Assembly: GCF_000142905.1 (NCBI RefSeq)
Contig: NW_013657631.1
Location: forward strand, 124,001 to 188,000
Direction of reading: 5' to 3'
DNA: 64,000 nucleotides
DNA from: Thecamonas trahens ATCC 50062
Lineage: Eukaryota; Protista; Apusomonadida
Below the pieces are notes generated by a model. It searched no databases. It saw nothing but the letters and a program-made list of their open reading frames with translations, and had not been told where the DNA came from. A program made the translations under genes and the position numbers. Of this stretch, positions 5,420 to 12,250 are shown one piece after another (position 1 is the stretch's first letter; every line of letters begins with the position of its first letter).

Positions 5420-6120
5420 CCTTCCCTCAGTGGCGTAGACAAGTCGAGTGCCCTTCACTATGCCGTTGGCCCTTCTCCCGCCTCTCGGCCCGCCACGGCT
5501 GCTCCTCTTGTCCGCGCCAGTTTGCCGCTCGCTTTGGCGCCAATGGGCGCCGCTGACACCGCCCCCGACAGCCAAATAAAAAGTTACAGCGCACAAATTG
5601 AGTGGCAGTTTGGGAGGTTTACAGTGACTGTTCCCCGTCAAAAACGATCGTCGGTCACGCGACGTCGCCGGGCCACAGAGTCGGACATTCGACTCTCGTA
5701 CACCACCTTGTCACCGACATTGCTCACGCGAACTCGGCATCCTACGCATAAAGTTGGTTTACATCTGAGCTACACAACTGCTCACACTCTCAGCTTACTT
5801 TTCGAAACCGGTGAACTGTACGTAGTGGGCGAGGAGGTCGGGGGTCATGCTTGCGGTACTTGCGGTGACTTTGCGGCGAGCGGCGAGTTTGGGCGAAGCG
5901 CCATGGTTTCCTCTTGGCAAAGGAGTGCGGATGTGCGGCGGGTGATGATGATGACGAATATTTCGCCGCAGTGTGCCTGTTCCGGTGTATTACCCGCGCT
6001 CGTGATCTGCCCATCCAGCAGCGTTTCGCCGCGGTGTGACCCATGCTTGCGGGGAAGGGGGAGGCACACTTTACGCACAGGGTGCACCTTACACTGTGGG
6101 GTGCAGCTGTGCAGATAACT

Positions 6121-8883
6121 ATGGCCAAGCGTAACGGTGGTGGCACCTCCGGAAGCAAATCTAAGGCCAAGCGGCGGCCGCGGCTGTACGGGCTGGTGAA
6201 GCAGAAGAAGATGGCGGCTGCCGAGCGGGTGGTGGAGGAGATGACCGCCGAGGGGCATGCCCTGGGCGTAGTCGAGTACACCATGCTCGTGCGCGGGTAC
6301 ACGGCTTGCGGCCAGCTGGAGCAAGCCGAGGCGGTGCTGGATCGCATGGCGGCGGCAAATGTGGCGCCGAATGACGTCACCTTTAACACCCTCATGCAGG
6401 GCTACGCGTCGCGCAAGCGCATGGACGCTGCCGAGGCCGTCGCCCGCCGCATGGTCCGCTCAGGCATTCCCATGGACCACTACTCGTTCAACATTCTTCT
6501 GGGCGGCTACATTGAGGCCCATGCCATCGAGGCTGCTGAGGAGCTGGTGTGCTCCCGGATGCCGGCCGCTGGCGTGGCCTACGACCCGGTCACCTTTACC
6601 CAGCTCCTCCGCGGCTACGTGCTCATTCGCGACATTTCGTCAGCCGAGAATGTACTTAAGCGGATGCGGGCTGCCGGGCTCGACCCCGAGTGTATGACGT
6701 ACAACAACCTCGCACAGGGCTACACTGCCGAGAAGCGGATGGACCTCGCCGAGGACGCGGTCAACCGCATGATTGCTGCCGGCATTGCCCCGAACAACTA
6801 CACGTACAACATCATTCTGCAGGGCTACACCCGCTCGCGCGACATGACCACCGCCGAGGACGTTGTTGCCCGCATGCGTGCTGCCGGCCTCTCGCCCGAC
6901 CGCTTCACCTACTCGGCCTTGGTTCGCGGCTACGTCGAGGTCGGCCATGGCGACGCTGCTCGTGGCTGCGTTGCCGAGGCCCACGAGGCCGGCGTCCGCC
7001 TCGACCACAACATCATGAAACTGGCCGCAAAGGCCCGCAATCGCAAGGGCGGCAATGTTAAGAGCGGCAAGCAGGGCAAGCCGAGCAGCTCGTCCAAGAG
7101 CAAGAAGAAGAGCAAGCGCCCAAAGTCGCCGCGCGACTCGATTGCTGCCGGCGGCGGCTCTTCGACCCGCGACGATGCGAGCGACGGCAAGTTCGCCGGC
7201 TGGGGCCCACGGAGCGGGCCTCCTCTCCGCACCTCGGCCGCTGCTCCGGCCGCCGCTAACCCGCCGGTCTCGGCCGCTGCCAACATATCTAAGCTCGTCC
7301 GCCAGCAGCGGCTCGACGACGCTGTGCTGGTGCTGGAGGCCAAGCTGGCAGCCGGCAAGCCTGCCGCGCTTGCGTACTACACCCAGGTTGTGCGCGGCTT
7401 TGTGCGCGCCGGGCGGACCGACGATGCGTCGGACCTTGTCCGCAGCATGCCCGAGCACGGCGTGCAGGCCGACGTCGTCACCTTTACCGCCCTTGTTCAG
7501 GGCTACATGGACGAGGGTATTCCGGCCGCCGCCGAGGAGGCCGTTGAGTGGATGCTCGCTGTGGGTATTGTGCCCAAGACCCACACCTACAACGTCCTCA
7601 TCCGCGGCTACATCAACGGCGGCAACCTCCGCGCAGCATCCGGTGTCATTCTCCGCATGCGCGCTAATGGCTGCCAGCCCGACCACCTCACCTACGCGCT
7701 CCTCATCCGCGCCCACCTCGAAGCTGGTAACCTCAACTCGGCCAGGATGGCCTACGACGAGATGCAGGCCTCGGGCATTGTGCCTGATCCGGTCCTCGCT
7801 CGCGACATTGCCGCCCTCAATGGCAATGGCTATGAGTATGGCTACGACGCGACGGCCGCCGCTGCCAACGGCAGCTCCTCGCCGCGCTCGCTCCCCTACG
7901 CGGTGGCTGCCTCGCAGGCCATCACACCCAGTCCTATCCCCACCGCTCGCGTTTCGATGACCCTCGGCGGCGCCAAGGCCAAGCTCGCCCGCGCGCTCAA
8001 GAAGCGCAAGTACGCCGAGGCCGAAGCTATCCTCGCCGACATCCTAGCCACCGGCCTCCGCCCCTCCGTCGTCATGTACACCATGCTTGTGGGCGCGTAC
8101 GCGCAGTCGGGGGATGTCGCTGCTGCTGAGAACGTCATCGTCCGCATGCAGCGTGAGGCGGGCGTCGAGCCCAACGTGGTGACCTTTAACTCGCTGATGA
8201 AGGGCTACACCGCGGCCGGCGACATGGCCGCGGCCGAGGACATTCTCGATCGCATGGACTCGCGCGGCGTCGCGCCCACCGTCTTTACCTACAACACCCT
8301 CATGATGGGCTACACCCGCTCAGGCGAGATGAGTGACGCTGAAGGTGTCCGCTCCCGCATGCTCGGCCGCGGCATCGAGCCCGACCGCATCACCCTCAAC
8401 GCGCTCCTCAAGGGCTACACCCGCGTCAAGGACGTGCCGGGCATCGTCCGCTCGCTCATTGCCATCCACCACTCTCGTGTCCGCCCCGAGCCTGCCCTCC
8501 TCCGCATCGCCCACGACCTGCTCCGTGACGCCGGCATTGACCCCGACAATCTCGACGCCCAGCCGCTCGCGGACGCTCCTGCGTCAGCGCCTGCGCCTGT
8601 GCTCGCCCCGCCCTCGCATCTGTCCGCCCCTCCGGCCGCGGCCCCCTGCCACGCACCCGCCCGTCCTCGCGCTCCTCATCCGGATCCTCCACGTCGCCGC
8701 CCATTGCGCTCCTCGAGCTCGCGCGCTCTGGCCCGATGGCACTCCGCGACCGTGACGAGGGCGCTGTCGCTGCTCTCGTCCGCCGCATCCTCATGTCCGT
8801 CTGAGGCCATGCGTCTCCCTCCCCTCTCCTCTTTCTCTTCATCTCCTCCTTTTGCCATTTCTTTGGGGGCATGGACAAGGTAA
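6121..8883 (+). CDS. Pentatricopeptide repeat (P-class PPR) protein with three repeat blocks
   Basis: At least 15 repeats of 35 aa (VTFNTLMQGY, TYNIILQGY, TFNSLMKGY, each ending G..PD/PN). The extreme C-terminus is uncertain because of probable frameshifts at about 8640-8700; an alternative stop lies near 8804. Confidence 0.92.
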   Translation: MAKRNGGGTSGSKSKAKRRPRLYGLVKQKKMAAAERVVEEMTAEGHALGVVEYTMLVRGYTACGQLEQAEAVLDRMAAANVAPNDVTFNTLMQGYASRKRMDAAEAVARRMVRSGIPMDHYSFNILLGGYIEAHAIEAAEELVCSRMPAAGVAYDPVTFTQLLRGYVLIRDISSAENVLKRMRAAGLDPECMTYNNLAQGYTAEKRMDLAEDAVNRMIAAGIAPNNYTYNIILQGYTRSRDMTTAEDVVARMRAAGLSPDRFTYSALVRGYVEVGHGDAARGCVAEAHEAGVRLDHNIMKLAAKARNRKGGNVKSGKQGKPSSSSKSKKKSKRPKSPRDSIAAGGGSSTRDDASDGKFAGWGPRSGPPLRTSAAAPAAANPPVSAAANISKLVRQQRLDDAVLVLEAKLAAGKPAALAYYTQVVRGFVRAGRTDDASDLVRSMPEHGVQADVVTFTALVQGYMDEGIPAAAEEAVEWMLAVGIVPKTHTYNVLIRGYINGGNLRAASGVILRMRANGCQPDHLTYALLIRAHLEAGNLNSARMAYDEMQASGIVPDPVLARDIAALNGNGYEYGYDATAAAANGSSSPRSLPYAVAASQAITPSPIPTARVSMTLGGAKAKLARALKKRKYAEAEAILADILATGLRPSVVMYTMLVGAYAQSGDVAAAENVIVRMQREAGVEPNVVTFNSLMKGYTAAGDMAAAEDILDRMDSRGVAPTVFTYNTLMMGYTRSGEMSDAEGVRSRMLGRGIEPDRITLNALLKGYTRVKDVPGIVRSLIAIHHSRVRPEPALLRIAHDLLRDAGIDPDNLDAQPLADAPASAPAPVLAPPSHLSAPPAAAPCHAPARPRAPHPDPPRRRPLRSSSSRALARWHSATVTRALSLLSSAASSCPSEAMRLPPLSSFSSSPPFAISLGAWTR

Positions 8884-8995
8884 ACGTCCATGTTGGCAAA
8901 GTCGCCGTGTCCTGGATTCGCCGTCTTCTTGACCCGAGAGTCACTGGCACCACCAGAAGCTTTTATCCGCTACCACCTGTCTTTCAATACCAGCT

Positions 8996-9335
8996 ATGGC
9001 TCGGGTTAAGATGACAAGCATGACAGGCGGCAAGGCACCTCGCAAGTGGACAGGCGGCAAAGCGCCTGGCAAGTCTCTCTCTTCTTCGCAACCAGCGTCT
9101 ATTGACGCCCTTGAGCCCCCTGCACCTATGACGTACGTCCCCCTCCCCACGCGCGTCGCTAAATGGAAGGCTCGGCCGCCCCCCGTCTTTCTTCGGTCAC
9201 GCCCCCCCCCCCCCCCCCCCCTCCTCCCCTCCCTTACCACCCACCCATTCACCACCCACTGCCCTTAACACCCTCCCCCTCCCCCGTCCATCTCTTTTCT
9301 TTCCCCCTTCTCAGCCTCCTTTCCAACCGCTGTAG

Positions 9336-9366
<31 letters not shown>

Positions 9367-12250
9367 CTCCCTACACATGTTCACTGTTTTGTACGACCTC
9401 AAGAACAACTTTTTTTGGGCGCCTTTGGAGATGGGTCTTGCCGGATGCCGCNNNNNNNNNNNNNNNNNNNNNNNNNNNNNNNNNNNNNNNNNNNNNNNNN
9501 NNNNNNNNNNNNNNNNNNNNNNNNNNNNNNNNNNNNNNNNNNNNNNNNNNNCCCCCCCAGGCTTGTGCATGCCGTGCTGTCAGCATTCGGTGGTCGCCAA
9601 AAGGCCATTTTTTCGCGCCCTGCCTCGCGCCATTCTCAACCCCGGCTCCACACAGCCGTATTCTTGTCCACCACTACCATCATTCTTTGCATTGTTTAGA
9701 CTGGTGCAGCGACTGGGTAGGCTTGCTATATCCTACATGGTTCGCCACCTGATTCGCCACCAGGCGAGTCCCGCAGTCTCGTTGCTGCTACCCGACATCT
9801 CCCGCACACGGCACCCGTCGGCTGGTACCCGTGATGGGCCTTGGTCTCTCTTGGCGTTGGGCTGGCGGCATCGGCCGAAAACCACGACCTTTTTTTAAGG
9901 GTTTTTGGAGGCGGGGGAAGGGAGGGGGTGTCGATGGGCAGTTTGATGTGCGTCGGACTCACGAGCGTGAGCGTATGGGGATGGGGACAGGGTGGACCAG
10001 CGGGCAATGATCGACGAGGAGAACGGGCTGCGTGAGCTTTTTGCCACCCGGCGGGAGGATGCGGCGATCAGCAACCCGTACGTGGGTCTGGTCAATGTTC
10101 ATGGCGAGATGGACACGTTCCGGTACGCGGCCGAGACGCCCGAAGAGGCGGCGGTGCCTAAGCTGCTGACGCGGGATCGTGTGGCGATTGTGCCCGGCGA
10201 GTCATCGGTGGTGGACGCGGCGACGTTTGCGTCGCGGTGGGAGGCGTTTTCCAAGGGCGTGTTCAAGGGCATGAACTGGAACAACATGTTTGTGGCCGGT
10301 GGTGCGGTGCTGTCGAACGTGCAGGTGGCGCCATCACCCGGAGCGCAGGGCTCGGACATTGACATTTTCCTCTACGGGCTGCCGACCGACGCAGCGGCCA
10401 ACGCCAAGCTCCGCGAGATCCATGCGACGATCCAGGCCAACTCTGGCGCTAACTGCGACGTCATCCGGACGCACCGGGCGGTGACGATCATCGGTGAGTA
10501 CCCGTTCCGGCACATCCAGATCATCCTCAAGGTGTACAAGTCGCCAGCCGAGGTCCTTCTCGGCTTTGACGTCGACTCGTGCTGCGTCGGCTATGATGGG
10601 ACGAGCGTGTGGACGGCCAAGCGGGCGCGGCGGGCGCTCAACAAGGGCTACAACCTGGTGAACATGACGCGGCGGTCACTGACGTACGAGACGCGGCTGA
10701 AGAAGTACGCCAAGCGCGGGTATGCTGTGGCGGTGCCGAACCTCGACAAGGCGCGAGTTGACCCGAACATTCTCACGCGGAGCGAGAAGAACGCGCAGGG
10801 TCTGGCCAAGCTGCTCATCTACGAGTACCAGTCGCGGCACGGCTCATTCCGGAAGTCGTACTCACGCGAGACCGGGACGGCAGTCAACCAGTACACCGTG
10901 GATGCTGTCGAAGAGTACGAGACCATCCACACGGCGTCCGATTATGCTGACGTGTTCATCCCGTGGGGCCCGCGCTGGTACTCGAAGCAGATCCTTCGCC
11001 TGCTCTCCAAGAAGGACCGGGCGCAGTATTTCCAGCAGGCGCGCTCCAACTTTCAGCACAAGCACATCTTTGTGTCGGGCATTGACGCCGCCGTCAACGG
11101 CCCGGTCGGCCACGAGGTCTGGTGCATCCACTGCCGCTCCAAGCTGCAGCTGGAGGCCGATGCTTCTGGCAAGTACGTGAGCAACCAGCTGACCTGGCTT
11201 CGCGACACGCCGGCCATGCAGGACTTTGAGAACGGCCGGACGCGGACCCTCATCACCGGCTCGTTCTTCCCCACCATCGAGTCCAACTGGATGAAGAACT
11301 GCTACCTGCCCGACGGCGCCCCGGCCCCGTCGCCGCACCCCCTTCAGATCAGCGGCGGGGGCGCGAGCAGCTCGCGCTATGGCGACGGTGGCTTCAATAA
11401 GCGGAAGTCATCCAAGGTGGCGAAGAAGAAGCAGGCTGCGAGGAAGCAGACTGCCAAAAAGTCATCGTCCAGCATGTTTGGTGGATCCTCCAAGCAGTCG
11501 AGCCCGTTCGGTTCCAAGCAGTCGCCCAGCCTGTTTGGCACCAAGATAGCCAACCCATTCGGCGCGCCCGCCCAGCCACAGCCCGCCGAGAACCAGTACG
11601 CTGCCAACCCGTTCGGCGCGCCCGCCCAGCCGCAACCGGCCCAGAACCAGTACGCTGCCAACCCGTTCGGCGCGCCCGCCCAGCCGCAACCGGCCCAGAA
11701 CCAGTACGCTGCCAACCCGTTCGGCGCGCCCGCCCAGCCGCAGCCGGCCCAGAACCAGTACGCTGCCAACCCGTTCGGCGCGCCCGCTCAGTCGGCGCCG
11801 GCCCAGAACCAGTACGCTGCCAACCCGTTCGGCGCGCCCGCTCAGTCGGCGCCGTCGCTCTCGGCCAATGACATGCGGCGACAGGCCGGCATGGGCGGGT
11901 TTGGCCAGTCGCAGCCGCAGCCGCAGTCGCCGAACCCGTCGTTCGGCGCTTCCGCGAGCGGCACCGCCGCCGGCTCCCTGCAGTCTGTCATCGCATCCAA
12001 GGTCCAGCCGTCGATGAACCCGATGTCGGTCGCGCTCATCATCATCAAGCTCTTCAACAAGGCCGGCATGATTGACTCGGACGCCAAGAATACCCTCAAG
12101 GACCTTGCCCTCCAGCAAGACTACCGCATCTGGGGCGCCATCGACTCGTTCCACATCGACAACGACGTTGAGGATCTTGCCGACACCTTCAACCGCGTCA
12201 TCAAGATCACCAGGGCCAACAGTACCTTCTCTGGCCCGAGCAACTTTTAA
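8996..12250 (+). CDS. Pol-beta-superfamily nucleotidyltransferase-like protein with an N-terminal histone H3 tail-like peptide and NPF/FG repeats
   Basis: Exon 1 8996..9132 (GTACGT donor, phase 2) joins in frame to the CAG acceptor at 9990. NTase signature FVAGGAV...SDIDIF, then HIQII, FDVDSCC and RLKKYAKRGY. The intron contains an N gap, so an extra exon is possible. Confidence 0.8.
11549..11854 (+). repeat. Coding 54-bp tandem repeat (ANPFGAPAQPQPAQNQYA), about 5.7 copies with 6 NPF motifs
   Basis: Near-identical DNA units are directly visible. Confidence 0.95.

What the first reader, a model, noticed from the sequence alone, without database searches (positions are those of the whole stretch)
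8996..11464. Histone H3 tail mimic fused to a nucleotidyltransferase
Seen: exon 1 encodes (M)ARVKMTSMTGGKAPRKWTGGKAPGK, compared with H3 ARTKQTARKSTGGKAPRK. It keeps the free A1-R2-x-K4 terminus and T6, lacks R8-K9-S10, and duplicates the TGGKAP (K14) unit. A phase-compatible GTACGT..CAG intron joins it to a Pol-beta-fold NTase (AGGAV..SDID). Just after the catalytic region, at 11438..11464, is ARKQTAKKS, close to H3 KQTARKS, the part missing from the N-terminus. Established: H3-like peptides in non-histone proteins can bind or be modified by chromatin readers and writers. Inference: this is a nucleotidyltransferase recruited to, regulated by, or acting as a decoy for H3K4/K9/K14 machinery. 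I do not know a described example of this architecture.
Basis: partly seen in the sequence, partly recalled or inferred. Interest (0 to 1): 0.8.

Follow-up and report, generated by a model that had tools for sequence, protein, structure and literature searches.

The report
Histone H3 tail on a nucleotidyltransferase
A single-copy gene of this GC-rich protist puts a copy of the first residues of histone H3 at the very start of a Gad2-family nucleotidyltransferase, and relatives in all three amoebozoan phyla do the same, which points to an undescribed link between this enzyme family and the machinery that reads or modifies the H3 tail.

Summary
Exon 1 (8996-9132) encodes MARVKMTSMTGGKAPRKWTGGKAPGK…LEPPAPM(T). 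It scores 53 against H3(1-19), and none of 5000 shuffles reached that. The assembly gap (9452-9551) lies inside the predicted intron and touches no coding base.

The 9132|9991 junction is supported by homology:
- Exon 1 ends in the family motif LEPPAPMT.
- The two exons are colinear with orthologues, with no residue missing or extra.
- Balamuthia has an intron in the same codon and phase (ATGAC|GTACGT).
- A metagenomic orthologue encodes tail and enzyme in one uninterrupted ORF.

The core carries an invariant GG…SDxD…FDxD signature. It models confidently (pLDDT 88), and its best structural matches are class II CCA/A-adding enzymes, poly(A) polymerase and TENT5. Its homologues carry Pfam PF26128 (Gad2).

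Orthologues from Rhizamoeba, Balamuthia, Mastigella and Pelomyxa begin MARTKQT…; the Rhizamoeba one matches H3 over 18 residues. Only residues 1-6 are shared by all. That fits the published "H3 N-terminal mimicry" rule (iM-Z-R-X-K), so the likeliest role is docking to H3K4-tail readers or writers; binding was not tested.

The internal ARKQTAKKS is present but not conserved, and only weakly above chance. I found no paper describing this architecture. No transcript data were available. The exons were never joined; every search was run exon by exon.

The parts
8996..9132 (+). Exon 1 (coding): start codon, H3-like leader, linker and the LEPPAPM(T) motif. It ends with 2 nt of a Thr codon.
   Evidence: Single copy in the genome. 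Aligns to residues 1-35 of Mastigella P0003.
8999..9073 (+). H3 tail mimic ARVKMTSMTGGKAPRKWTGGKAPGK. It starts at Ala directly after the initiator Met.
   Evidence: SW 53 against H3(1-19), 0 of 5000 shuffles. Fits iM-Z-R-X-K of PMC8166343.
9022..9074 (+). 27-nt tandem duplication that doubles the TGGKAP(R/G)K (K14-like) unit.
   Evidence: TRF: period 27, 2.0 copies, 88% matches.
9110..9132 (+). LEPPAPM(T), a family motif that precedes the first helix of the core in orthologues.
   Evidence: PLEPPAPMT in Pelomyxa and Mastigella, EPPAPMT in Rhizamoeba, PAAPMT in Balamuthia. Order begins here in the model of P0025.
9133..9990 (+). Predicted intron GTACGT…ACAG. It holds C homopolymers and the assembly gap 9452-9551, so its true length is unknown.
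   Evidence: Same codon and phase as intron 1 of the Balamuthia gene. No Rfam match.
9991..12250 (+). Exon 2: the rest of the protein, up to and including the stop codon.
   Evidence: Open frame 9971-12250, closed upstream by TGA at 9968-9970. Residue 3 aligns to residue 39 of P0003.
9992..11329 (+). Gad2-family (PF26128) Pol-beta-type nucleotidyltransferase core, about 446 residues.
   Evidence: Homologues down to E 1e-187; 94 of the 100 listed carry PF26128. AF2 pLDDT 88, pTM 0.90. Best folds are class II CCA/A-adding enzymes, PAP and TENT5.
10295..10303 (+). A102-G103-G104 of the NTase signature.
   Evidence: A102 and G103 invariant, G104 at 90% or more in 50 sequences.
10352..10363 (+). 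S121-D122-I123-D124, the DxD metal-binding motif on strand 123-128.
   Evidence: D122 and D124 invariant. Strand E123-128 in the model.
10565..10576 (+). F192-D193-V194-D195, a second invariant acidic pair and candidate third carboxylate.
   Evidence: Invariant in 50 sequences. Its role is inferred, not shown.
11399..11464 (+). Basic linker KRKSSKVAKKKQAARKQTAKKS, with the internal H3-like ARKQTAKKS at 11438-11464. It looks like a nuclear localisation signal.
   Evidence: Absent from all homologues examined. Several orthologues have a C2H2 finger at this place instead.
11549..11845 (+). 54-nt x 5.5 array encoding NPFGAPAQPQPAQNQYAA repeats (FG/NPF type).
   Evidence: TRF, 95% matches. Orthologues have FG-rich linkers.
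12014..12220 (+). Conserved C-terminal helical domain (…LKDLALQQD…IDNDVEDLADTFNRVI).
   Evidence: Shared by the orthologous group, including all tailed members and the PARP-fused ones. Four helices at pLDDT about 90 in P0025.

Best explanation
A two-exon gene (8996-9132 and 9991-12250, 798 codons) encodes a modular protein. In order it has: a flexible H3-like N-terminal leader, the LEPPAPMT motif, a Gad2-family (PF26128) Pol-beta-type nucleotidyltransferase core with its catalytic signature intact, a basic linker, FG/NPF repeats and a small helical C-terminal domain.

Shown here: the leader belongs to this gene, and it is an inherited feature of an orthologous group that spans the three amoebozoan phyla.

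Inferred mechanism. After removal of the initiator Met (Ala at position 2 allows it), the free A1-R2-x-K4-x-T6 end acts as an H3 N-terminal mimic. It docks into pockets that normally hold the unmodified or K4-methylated H3 tail (PHD fingers, WD40 proteins of the WDR5 or RBBP4 kind, K4 methyltransferases or demethylases). This would tether the enzyme to a chromatin complex or place it under that complex's control.

The catalytic module most resembles enzymes that add nucleotides to RNA 3' ends, so its likeliest activity is nucleotide addition to a nucleic-acid end in the nucleus.

My confidence is about 0.9 for the architecture, its conservation and the NTase fold. It is about 0.45 for reader or writer docking as the tail's role. 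The confidence figure given with this explanation is for the whole statement.
For: Gene model.
- Exon 1 ends in LEPPAPM(T). Orthologues read PLEPPAPMT followed by xxQxAxIxxE.
- Exon 1 aligns to P0003 residues 1-35, and exon 2 residue 3 aligns to P0003 residue 39. The three residues between (TVD against TAK) are exactly those supplied by the split codon plus the first two exon-2 codons.
- Balamuthia intron 1 lies at ATGAC|GTACGT after …PAAPMT, the same codon and phase.
- P0038 encodes tail and core in one intronless 2598-nt gene.
- Both exons are single copy.

Tail.
- SW 53, 0 of 5000 shuffles.
- H3-like starts: P0025 Rhizamoeba (18 residues identical to H3), P0023 Balamuthia (10), P0003 Mastigella (8), P0002 Pelomyxa (6), and the P0038/P0040 clade (13, then L in place of K14, then APRKQLA).
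- These taxa sit in Tubulinea, Discosea and Evosea.
- Tailed rows are spread through one 24-row clade (SH-aLRT 97), including its deep P0038 branch.
- The leader fits the published iM-Z-R-X-K rule for H3 N-terminal mimicry proteins, which bind PHD and Tudor domains and NuRD in vitro (PMC8166343).
- AF2 leaves residues 1-28 of P0025 disordered and undocked, like a histone tail.
- A clear second gain and a further partial case: L054 begins MARTQQTARKT in one ORF with an ankyrin-fused family member, and L042 has TARKPPGKKAPRK ahead of its core. Their scores are 45 and 53, against a reverse-strand control maximum of 29.

Enzyme.
- GG, DxD and FDxD are invariant.
- Model pLDDT 88.
- VIA Z 8.8, 7.5 and 7.5 to A-adding enzyme, PAP and CCA-adding enzyme; Foldseek also finds TENT5C and CD-NTases.
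- Homologues carry PF26128 Gad2.
- Gad2 is predicted to be an NTase (bioRxiv 10.1101/2023.05.01.538930).

Nuclear context. Other family members are fused to WGR-PARP, WWE, SAP, Sin3-PAH, MYND and polynucleotide kinase modules.
Against: - There is no transcript or protein evidence for the junction or for Met removal.
- The intron contains an assembly gap, and at about 858 nt it is far longer than the 62-nt Balamuthia intron.
- Many orthologues with apparently complete N-termini lack the tail (Ceratiomyxa P0004, Copromyxa P0007, Mastigamoeba P0011, the Pelomyxa paralogue P0009). The tail is therefore dispensable for the core function.
- A strict-motif scan of 78 metagenomic homologue loci found no tail. 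A looser scoring scan of the same loci found L054 and L042. None of 119 ascomycete relatives of L054 has one.
- Position 3 is Val here, not Thr, and residues 7-10 are not H3-like.
- No binding partner, substrate or activity has been shown for any eukaryotic member. The mechanism of phage Gad2 is itself unknown.
- Structural matches are moderate (Z below 9, TM 0.2-0.3), and there is no sequence-profile link to PolyA_pol.
Confidence: 0.5

Rival explanations
1. Exon 1 is not part of the NTase gene. It would be a decayed H3 pseudogene or chance ORF brought next to the gene by a scaffold misjoin at the gap, and the enzyme would start at the first Met of exon 2 (…AMIDEENGLRELF).
For: The gap lies between the two exons (finding note). 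The closest homologue P0001 is called from MIRAEDELRQLF, which aligns with the internal Met. No RNA data were available.
Against: Exon 1 ends in the family motif LEPPAPMT and is exactly colinear with orthologues. The intron position and phase are conserved with Balamuthia. Six further orthologues have the tail. Both exons are unique in the genome. P0001 comes from a prokaryote-style ORF call on a short contig, which would miss an upstream exon.
Confidence: 0.03
2. The leader is a histone-type transport or chaperone signal. It would let the enzyme use the H3 import route (importin-4 / Kap123 type karyopherins, H3 chaperones), not chromatin readers.
For: The H3 tail carries the histone's nuclear import signal (my own knowledge, not tested here). 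The protein also has a basic NLS-like linker and FG-type repeats. Family members are fused to nuclear modules.
Against: The part shared by all tailed orthologues is residues 1-6. To my knowledge, the lysines around 14-23 that matter for karyopherin binding are absent in Balamuthia, Mastigella and Pelomyxa. The strict placement at the extreme N-terminus is a hallmark of reader pockets, not of import signals.
Confidence: 0.15
3. The leader is a cis pseudo-substrate or auto-modification site. On this view the NTase family acts on H3 tails themselves, for example by nucleotidylylation of T6 or K4. Its own H3-like end would inhibit the enzyme, prime it or be modified by it, as histone-mimic loops do in G9a, SETDB1, Clr4 and PRC2.
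For: H3-like leaders were attached to PF26128 enzymes more than once: the amoebozoan clade, L054 and L042. That is easier to explain if the family has an intrinsic relation to the H3 tail. K4 and T6 are kept in all seven tailed orthologues. Auto-modified histone-mimic motifs are documented for SETDB1 (bioRxiv 10.1101/2025.01.21.634156, listed).
Against: AF2 does not dock the tail on the core; residues 1-28 have pLDDT under 50. The nearest folds act on RNA 3' ends, not proteins. L054 has Q at position 4. Most family members have no tail.
Confidence: 0.12
4. The resemblance to H3 is a compositional accident of a Lys/Ala/Gly/Pro-rich disordered leader and has no function.
For: Disordered basic leaders are common. 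Residues 7-10 differ from H3, and the tail is missing in many orthologues.
Against: 0 of 5000 composition-preserving shuffles reach the score. Orthologues are identical to H3 over up to 18 residues. A genome-wide pattern for M-A-R-T/V-K-Q/M-T finds only the three H3 genes, this gene and one other locus, and none in the reversed control.
Confidence: 0.02

Closest known systems
H3 N-terminal mimicry proteins (H3TMs: VRK1, PCLAF/PAF15, BCL11A/B, SALL, FOG1 and others; Chen et al. 2021, PMC8166343)
   Same: An iM-Z-R-X-K motif at the extreme N-terminus of a non-histone protein, with a small residue that allows Met removal, R2 and K4. In vitro such peptides bind PHD and Tudor readers and NuRD, and some are methylated at K4.
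   Different: Human H3TMs share only 4-5 residues with H3. Here the match runs to 18 identical residues (Rhizamoeba), includes a duplicated K14 unit (window), and is inherited across Amoebozoa. The carrier is an enzyme family with no described chromatin role. No binding data exist.
SNAG-domain repressors (Snail, Gfi1, INSM1) binding LSD1, and the PAF15 VRTK end binding the UHRF1 PHD finger (my own knowledge, not checked here)
   Same: A free N-terminus that imitates H3 residues 1-6 is used to dock a non-histone protein into an H3-tail pocket.
   Different: Those carriers are transcription or replication factors, not enzymes of the NTase fold, and their sequences are only loosely H3-like.
Gad2, Gabija anti-defence protein 2 of SPbeta-like phages (Pfam PF26128)
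   Same: The window protein's homologues, including one 63% identical, are assigned to PF26128. Gad2 is predicted to be an NTase of about 400 residues.
   Different: Phage Gad2 is a single-domain anti-defence protein of bacteria-infecting viruses with an unknown mechanism. tblastn of the core against 50,697 phage records finds nothing. The eukaryotic proteins add an H3 leader, FG repeats and a C-terminal domain.
Class II tRNA nucleotidyltransferases and bacterial poly(A) polymerase (PolyA_pol, PF01743); TENT5/FAM46
   Same: These are the best structural matches. VIA gives 3wfo Z 8.8, 3aql Z 7.5 and 3h37 Z 7.5, each over 173-184 aligned residues of head and neck. Foldseek gives TENT5C at E 5e-4. 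All share a GG…DxD signature.
   Different: There is no PF01743 hit. hhalign against the genome's own CCA enzyme gives probability 0.2%. The genome has a separate canonical CCA enzyme. About half of the 446-residue core has no counterpart in these enzymes.
Giant-virus 'ankyrin repeat' and 'BTB' proteins with the same core (Fadolivirus, Pithovirus-like, Pandoravirus, Bodo saltans virus)
   Same: Strong structural matches to the whole core (Foldseek E 1.6e-33, TMq 0.75). Giant-virus MAG loci are 29-31% identical over residues 4-455.
   Different: The one viral copy read through (L016) has no H3 leader and continues into ankyrin repeats.

Membership tests
Pfam PF26128 (Gad2) | Significant match to the family HMM | not testable with these tools
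   The model is absent from the local Pfam copy, and NCBIfam gives nothing. By proxy, 94 of the 100 listed homologues carry PF26128 in precomputed annotation, including P0001 at 63% identity. Atlas clusters nearest to orthologue P0023 are 94-96% PF26128.
Pfam PF26128 (Gad2) | Anti-Gabija activity in phage infection | not testable with these tools
   This is a bacterial and phage phenotype. It has no meaning for a eukaryotic nuclear gene.
Pol-beta-type nucleotidyltransferase superfamily | hG[GS] … DxD signature plus a further conserved carboxylate | tested here: met
   A102-G103-G104, S121-D122-x-D124 and F192-D193-x-D195 are invariant or nearly so in 50 sequences and present in the window.
Pol-beta-type nucleotidyltransferase superfamily | Alpha/beta NTase fold | tested here: met
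   AF2 pLDDT 88.1, pTM 0.90. Every top PDB match is an NTase.
PolyA_pol (PF01743; class II CCA-adding enzymes and PAP) | Sequence match to the family profile | tested here: not met
   No PF01743 hit at E up to 0.1. A genome-wide PF01743 search finds only C38:6130. hhalign probability is 0.2%.
H3 N-terminal mimicry proteins (H3TM) | iM-Z-R-X-K at the protein's N-terminus, with Z permissive for Met removal | tested here: met
   M-A-R-V-K at 8996-9010. Rule taken from PMC8166343.
H3 N-terminal mimicry proteins (H3TM) | Binding to H3K4-tail effector domains, and K4 methylation | not testable with these tools
   This needs peptide arrays or ITC and proteomics.
Histone H3 (PF00125) | Histone fold following the tail | tested here: not met
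   No PF00125 hit on exon 1 or exon 2. The genome-wide histone search does not list this locus.

The most novel reading that the evidence does not exclude
PF26128 enzymes of eukaryotes would be writers of a nucleotide-based mark on the H3 N-terminal tail, or on proteins bound to it. The H3-like leader would be their cis pseudo-substrate or auto-modification site. That would explain why H3-like leaders were gained more than once by this one enzyme family.

A related reading is that the leader is an integrated decoy. It would arm an effector NTase when a giant-virus factor that targets host H3 tails engages it.
Probability: 0.1. Interest if true: 0.92.

Novelty: new variant of a known kind. Interest (0 to 1): 0.72.

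Why it matters
Histone mimicry is known mostly from short motifs of 4-5 residues in animal and viral proteins, and it is hard to tell from chance. Here a cellular enzyme family carries up to 18 residues identical to the H3 N-terminus. The leader always sits at the free end. It has been kept since before the split of the three amoebozoan phyla and was gained again elsewhere. That is strong comparative evidence that the mimicry is functional.

The finding gives a function-less but widespread enzyme family a concrete, testable link to chromatin. The family (Gad2-like NTases) occurs in amoebae, fungi, haptophytes and, in large numbers, giant viruses. The finding also provides natural variants (1-6 only, 1-10, 1-19, K4Q, duplicated K14 unit). 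These show which part of the tail is under selection and suggest which peptides to test.

Tried and rejected
- Local Pfam, NCBIfam and PADLOC scans of the core gave nothing useful. PHROGs gave only phrog_4400 at E 0.0018, of unknown function.
- The profile search of PDB sequences gave no relative.
- tblastn of the core against phage genomes gave no match, so the Gad2 link could not be tested directly.
- A word search with the H3-tail part of P0025 returned only mis-annotated histone-fold fusions and was uninformative.
- DNA for the closest homologue P0001 and for P0038 could not be fetched, so their upstream regions were not read.
- A strict motif scan upstream of 78 metagenomic homologues found nothing. 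A scoring scan then found L054 and L042.
- 119 ascomycete relatives of L054 have no tail.
- Giant-virus homologues: the one read through (L016) has no tail.
- A recent copy of the organism's own H3 is rejected. Own H3 reads KSATGAKAPRK, while the mimic keeps the canonical TGGKAPRK.
- An RNA gene in the intron is not supported; there is no Rfam match.
- Intramolecular docking of the tail is not seen by AF2.
- The organism could not be named. Notes of the scan gave nothing. The best matches of the gene are amoebozoan.
- The costly representative search was not used, because the word search settled the family.
- Two loci from 'human gut metagenome' assemblies (L091, L095) were left out of my scripts as a precaution. 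I do not take them for human DNA.
- Rows P0028, P0053, P0059, P0068, P0070 and P0080 were left out of the tree because my motif anchor did not find their core. The tree is the quick IQ-TREE version, not the finished careful search.
- The joined (spliced) protein was never built or searched.
Full report
**What is in the sequence**

The window is GC-rich (about 63%) eukaryotic DNA with long ORFs on both strands. It belongs to a 28.7-Mb assembly of 131 contigs.

At 8996 an ORF starts MARVKMTSMTGGKAPRKWTGGKAPGKSLSSSQPASIDALEPPAPMT. A 752-codon ORF runs from 9992 to 12250. It is closed upstream by a TGA at 9968-9970.

Against H3 residues 1-19 (taken from a database protein, not typed), exon 1 scores 53 by Smith-Waterman. 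Composition-preserving shuffles give mean 20.5 and maximum 44, and 0 of 5000 reach 53. The alignment keeps A1, R2, K4, T6 and TGGKAPRK. The second TGGKAPGK is a true 27-nt tandem duplication at 9022-9074.

**The gap and the splice**

The N run 9452-9551 lies inside the predicted intron 9133-9990, so no coding base depends on it. The remaining question is whether the two sides belong together. Four observations say they do.

1. Exon 1 ends in LEPPAPM(T). Orthologues read PLEPPAPMT (Pelomyxa, Mastigella), EPPAPMT (Rhizamoeba) and PAAPMT (Balamuthia), directly followed by xxQxAxIxxE…LF. Exon 2 begins in just that way: VDQRAMIDEENGLRELF.
2. BLASTP puts exon 1 on residues 1-35 of Mastigella P0003, and exon 2 residue 3 on residue 39. 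The three residues between are exactly the split Thr codon plus two codons.
3. In the annotated Balamuthia gene the first intron sits at ATGAC|GTACGT after …PAAPMT. That is the same codon, phase and donor hexamer as 9132|9133 here.
4. Exon 1 and the core are each unique in the genome.

Also, a metagenomic orthologue (P0038) encodes tail and enzyme in one intronless 2598-nt gene.

The model is 137 + 2260 nt = 799 codons with the stop. Every search used exon 1 or exon 2 by reference.

**The enzyme**

The local Pfam copy gives no hit. The word search found 100 homologues (best E 2.5e-187), and 94 of them are annotated PF26128. The encoding-contig tool names this family Gad2, and the Atlas confirms it for Pfam 38.1.

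Gad2 is the second Gabija anti-defence protein of SPbeta-like phages. It is predicted from AlphaFold to be a nucleotidyltransferase, and its mechanism is unknown.

In an alignment of 50 sequences, A102, G103, D122, D124, F192, D193 and D195 are invariant, and all are present here.

The AlphaFold2 model of residues 1-460 of exon 2 is confident (pLDDT 88.1, pTM 0.90). Its structural matches are as follows.

| Search | Best matches | Scores |
|---|---|---|
| Foldseek, PDB | TENT5C, A-adding and CCA-adding enzymes, poly(A) polymerase, CD-NTases | best E 4.7e-4, TM 0.2-0.3 |
| VIA-align | 3wfo; 3aql; 3h37; Arabidopsis CCA enzyme; TENT5B | Z 8.8; 7.5; 7.5; 7.3; 7.2, over about 170-195 residues |
| Foldseek, viral models | giant-virus 'ankyrin' and 'BTB' proteins | E 1.6e-33, TMq 0.75 |

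The fold is therefore a Pol-beta-type NTase with large family-specific additions. It is not a PolyA_pol member by sequence:
- there is no PF01743 hit;
- the genome's one canonical CCA enzyme is elsewhere;
- hhalign against that enzyme gives probability 0.2%.

**The H3 tail in relatives**

This is the central result. Orthologues start as follows.

| Orthologue | N-terminus |
|---|---|
| Rhizamoeba saxonica P0025 | MARTKQTARKSTGGKAPRK… |
| Balamuthia mandrillaris P0023 | MARTKQTARKS… |
| Mastigella eilhardi P0003 | MARTKQTAR… |
| Pelomyxa schiedti P0002 | MARTKQTQR… |
| Metagenomic clade P0038, P0040, P0101-P0103 | MARTKQTARKSTGGLAPRKQLA… |

The named species fall in Tubulinea, Discosea and Evosea, the three amoebozoan phyla.

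On a quick maximum-likelihood tree the tailed rows are scattered through one 24-row clade (SH-aLRT 97), including its deep P0038 branch. Several 'untailed' rows are ORF calls that begin exactly at the exon-2 equivalent. The simplest history is one old gain with losses.

The tail is not universal. Transcriptome-derived orthologues of Ceratiomyxa, Copromyxa and Mastigamoeba lack it.

Only A-R-T/V-K-Q/M-T is common to all tailed members. The leader is always at the extreme N-terminus.

The organism's own H3 reads ARTKQTARKSATGAKAPRK. The mimic's TGGKAPRK is therefore closer to canonical H3 than the resident histone is. This argues against a recent copy.

**Recurrence**

A scoring scan of the 2 kb upstream of 78 metagenomic homologues gave two hits far above the reverse-strand control (maximum 29).
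- L054 starts MARTQQTARKT at the first ATG after an in-frame stop. It runs in one ORF into an ankyrin-fused family member.
- L042 has …TARKPPGKKAPRK… in frame ahead of its core.

None of 119 ascomycete relatives of L054 has such a start, so that leader looks like a separate gain.

**The internal motif**

ARKQTAKKS is at 11438-11464, inside a basic NLS-like stretch where several orthologues have a C2H2 finger instead. No homologue has it.

Its score is reached by 19 of 5000 local shuffles against canonical H3, but by 284 of 5000 against the own H3 tail. I treat it as unproven.

**How it most likely works**

- *Shown:* the architecture, its conservation, the fold and the intact catalytic signature.
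- *From the literature:* N-termini of the form iM-Z-R-X-K bind H3K4-tail effector domains and NuRD in vitro, and some are methylated at K4 (PMC8166343).
- *Inferred:* after Met removal the leader docks in such pockets and tethers or regulates the NTase.

AlphaFold2 of the full-length Rhizamoeba orthologue leaves residues 1-28 disordered and undocked. Order begins at EPPAPMT. This fits a free, tail-like address label and gives no support to stable self-binding.

Other family members are fused to WGR-PARP, WWE, SAP, PAH, MYND and polynucleotide-kinase modules, which fits a nuclear, nucleic-acid-end role.

Rivals are a histone-type import signal, a cis pseudo-substrate for an H3-directed NTase, a misjoin and chance. 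The last two are contradicted by the data above.

**Novelty**

Four literature searches found H3 mimicry in animal and viral proteins and Gad2 in phages. None found anything on an H3 tail fused to this enzyme family. I rate it a new variant of a known kind (H3 N-terminal mimicry) on an uncharacterised enzyme family.

Noticed in passing
G000:C44:207683 (locus L031:1001-3726): A second non-histone gene candidate starts MARTKQTAR. It is the only other genome-wide hit of the M-A-R-T/V-K-Q/M-T pattern besides the three H3 genes and this gene. The 256-codon S/T/K-rich ORF overlaps a frame-shifted 699-codon ORF with a protein kinase domain. A GTGAGC donor lies right after the ninth codon, with in-frame acceptors at 1695 and 1866. 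It may be an H3-mimic kinase; this is unresolved.
   Followed up: partly
L002:405-1172 (G000:C57, next to an H3 gene): A 255-residue H3 variant starts MARVKQSLVRKN, has a long basic N-terminal extension, and ends in a divergent histone fold. It looks like a CenH3. It shares the MARVK start with the window gene.
   Followed up: no
L001:1474-1887, also L002 and L004: The organism's canonical H3 has an extra residue in the K14 region (KSATGAKAPRKS instead of KSTGGKAPRKQ).
   Followed up: partly
window 12014-12220, and P0025 residues 680-742: A small four-helix C-terminal domain (pLDDT about 90) is conserved in the whole orthologous group and in the PARP-fused members. No Pfam family matches it.
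   Followed up: partly
P0026 (Tiarina transcriptome), also P0029, P0037, P0039: A WGR-PARP_reg-PARP catalytic module, as in DNA-break-sensing PARPs, is fused upstream of the same NTase core and C-terminal domain.
   Followed up: partly
window 8676-8891 minus strand, and 6043-8883 plus strand: The 946-codon PPR ORF runs on through low-complexity sequence to 113 nt before exon 1. A minus-strand ORF starting near 8810 (MASDGHEDAADESS…) overlaps its end. The region 8811-8995 may be a short two-way promoter.
   Followed up: no
window 9336-9365 and other C runs in 9180-9370: A C30 homopolymer and further long C runs fill the intron next to the assembly gap. They are probably the reason for the gap.
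   Followed up: no
P0011 residues 395-407 (Mastigamoeba balamuthi): An untailed orthologue has an internal RKESGGNAPRRNV inside the core that resembles H3 RKSTGGKAPRKQL (ungapped score 34). It may be chance.
   Followed up: no
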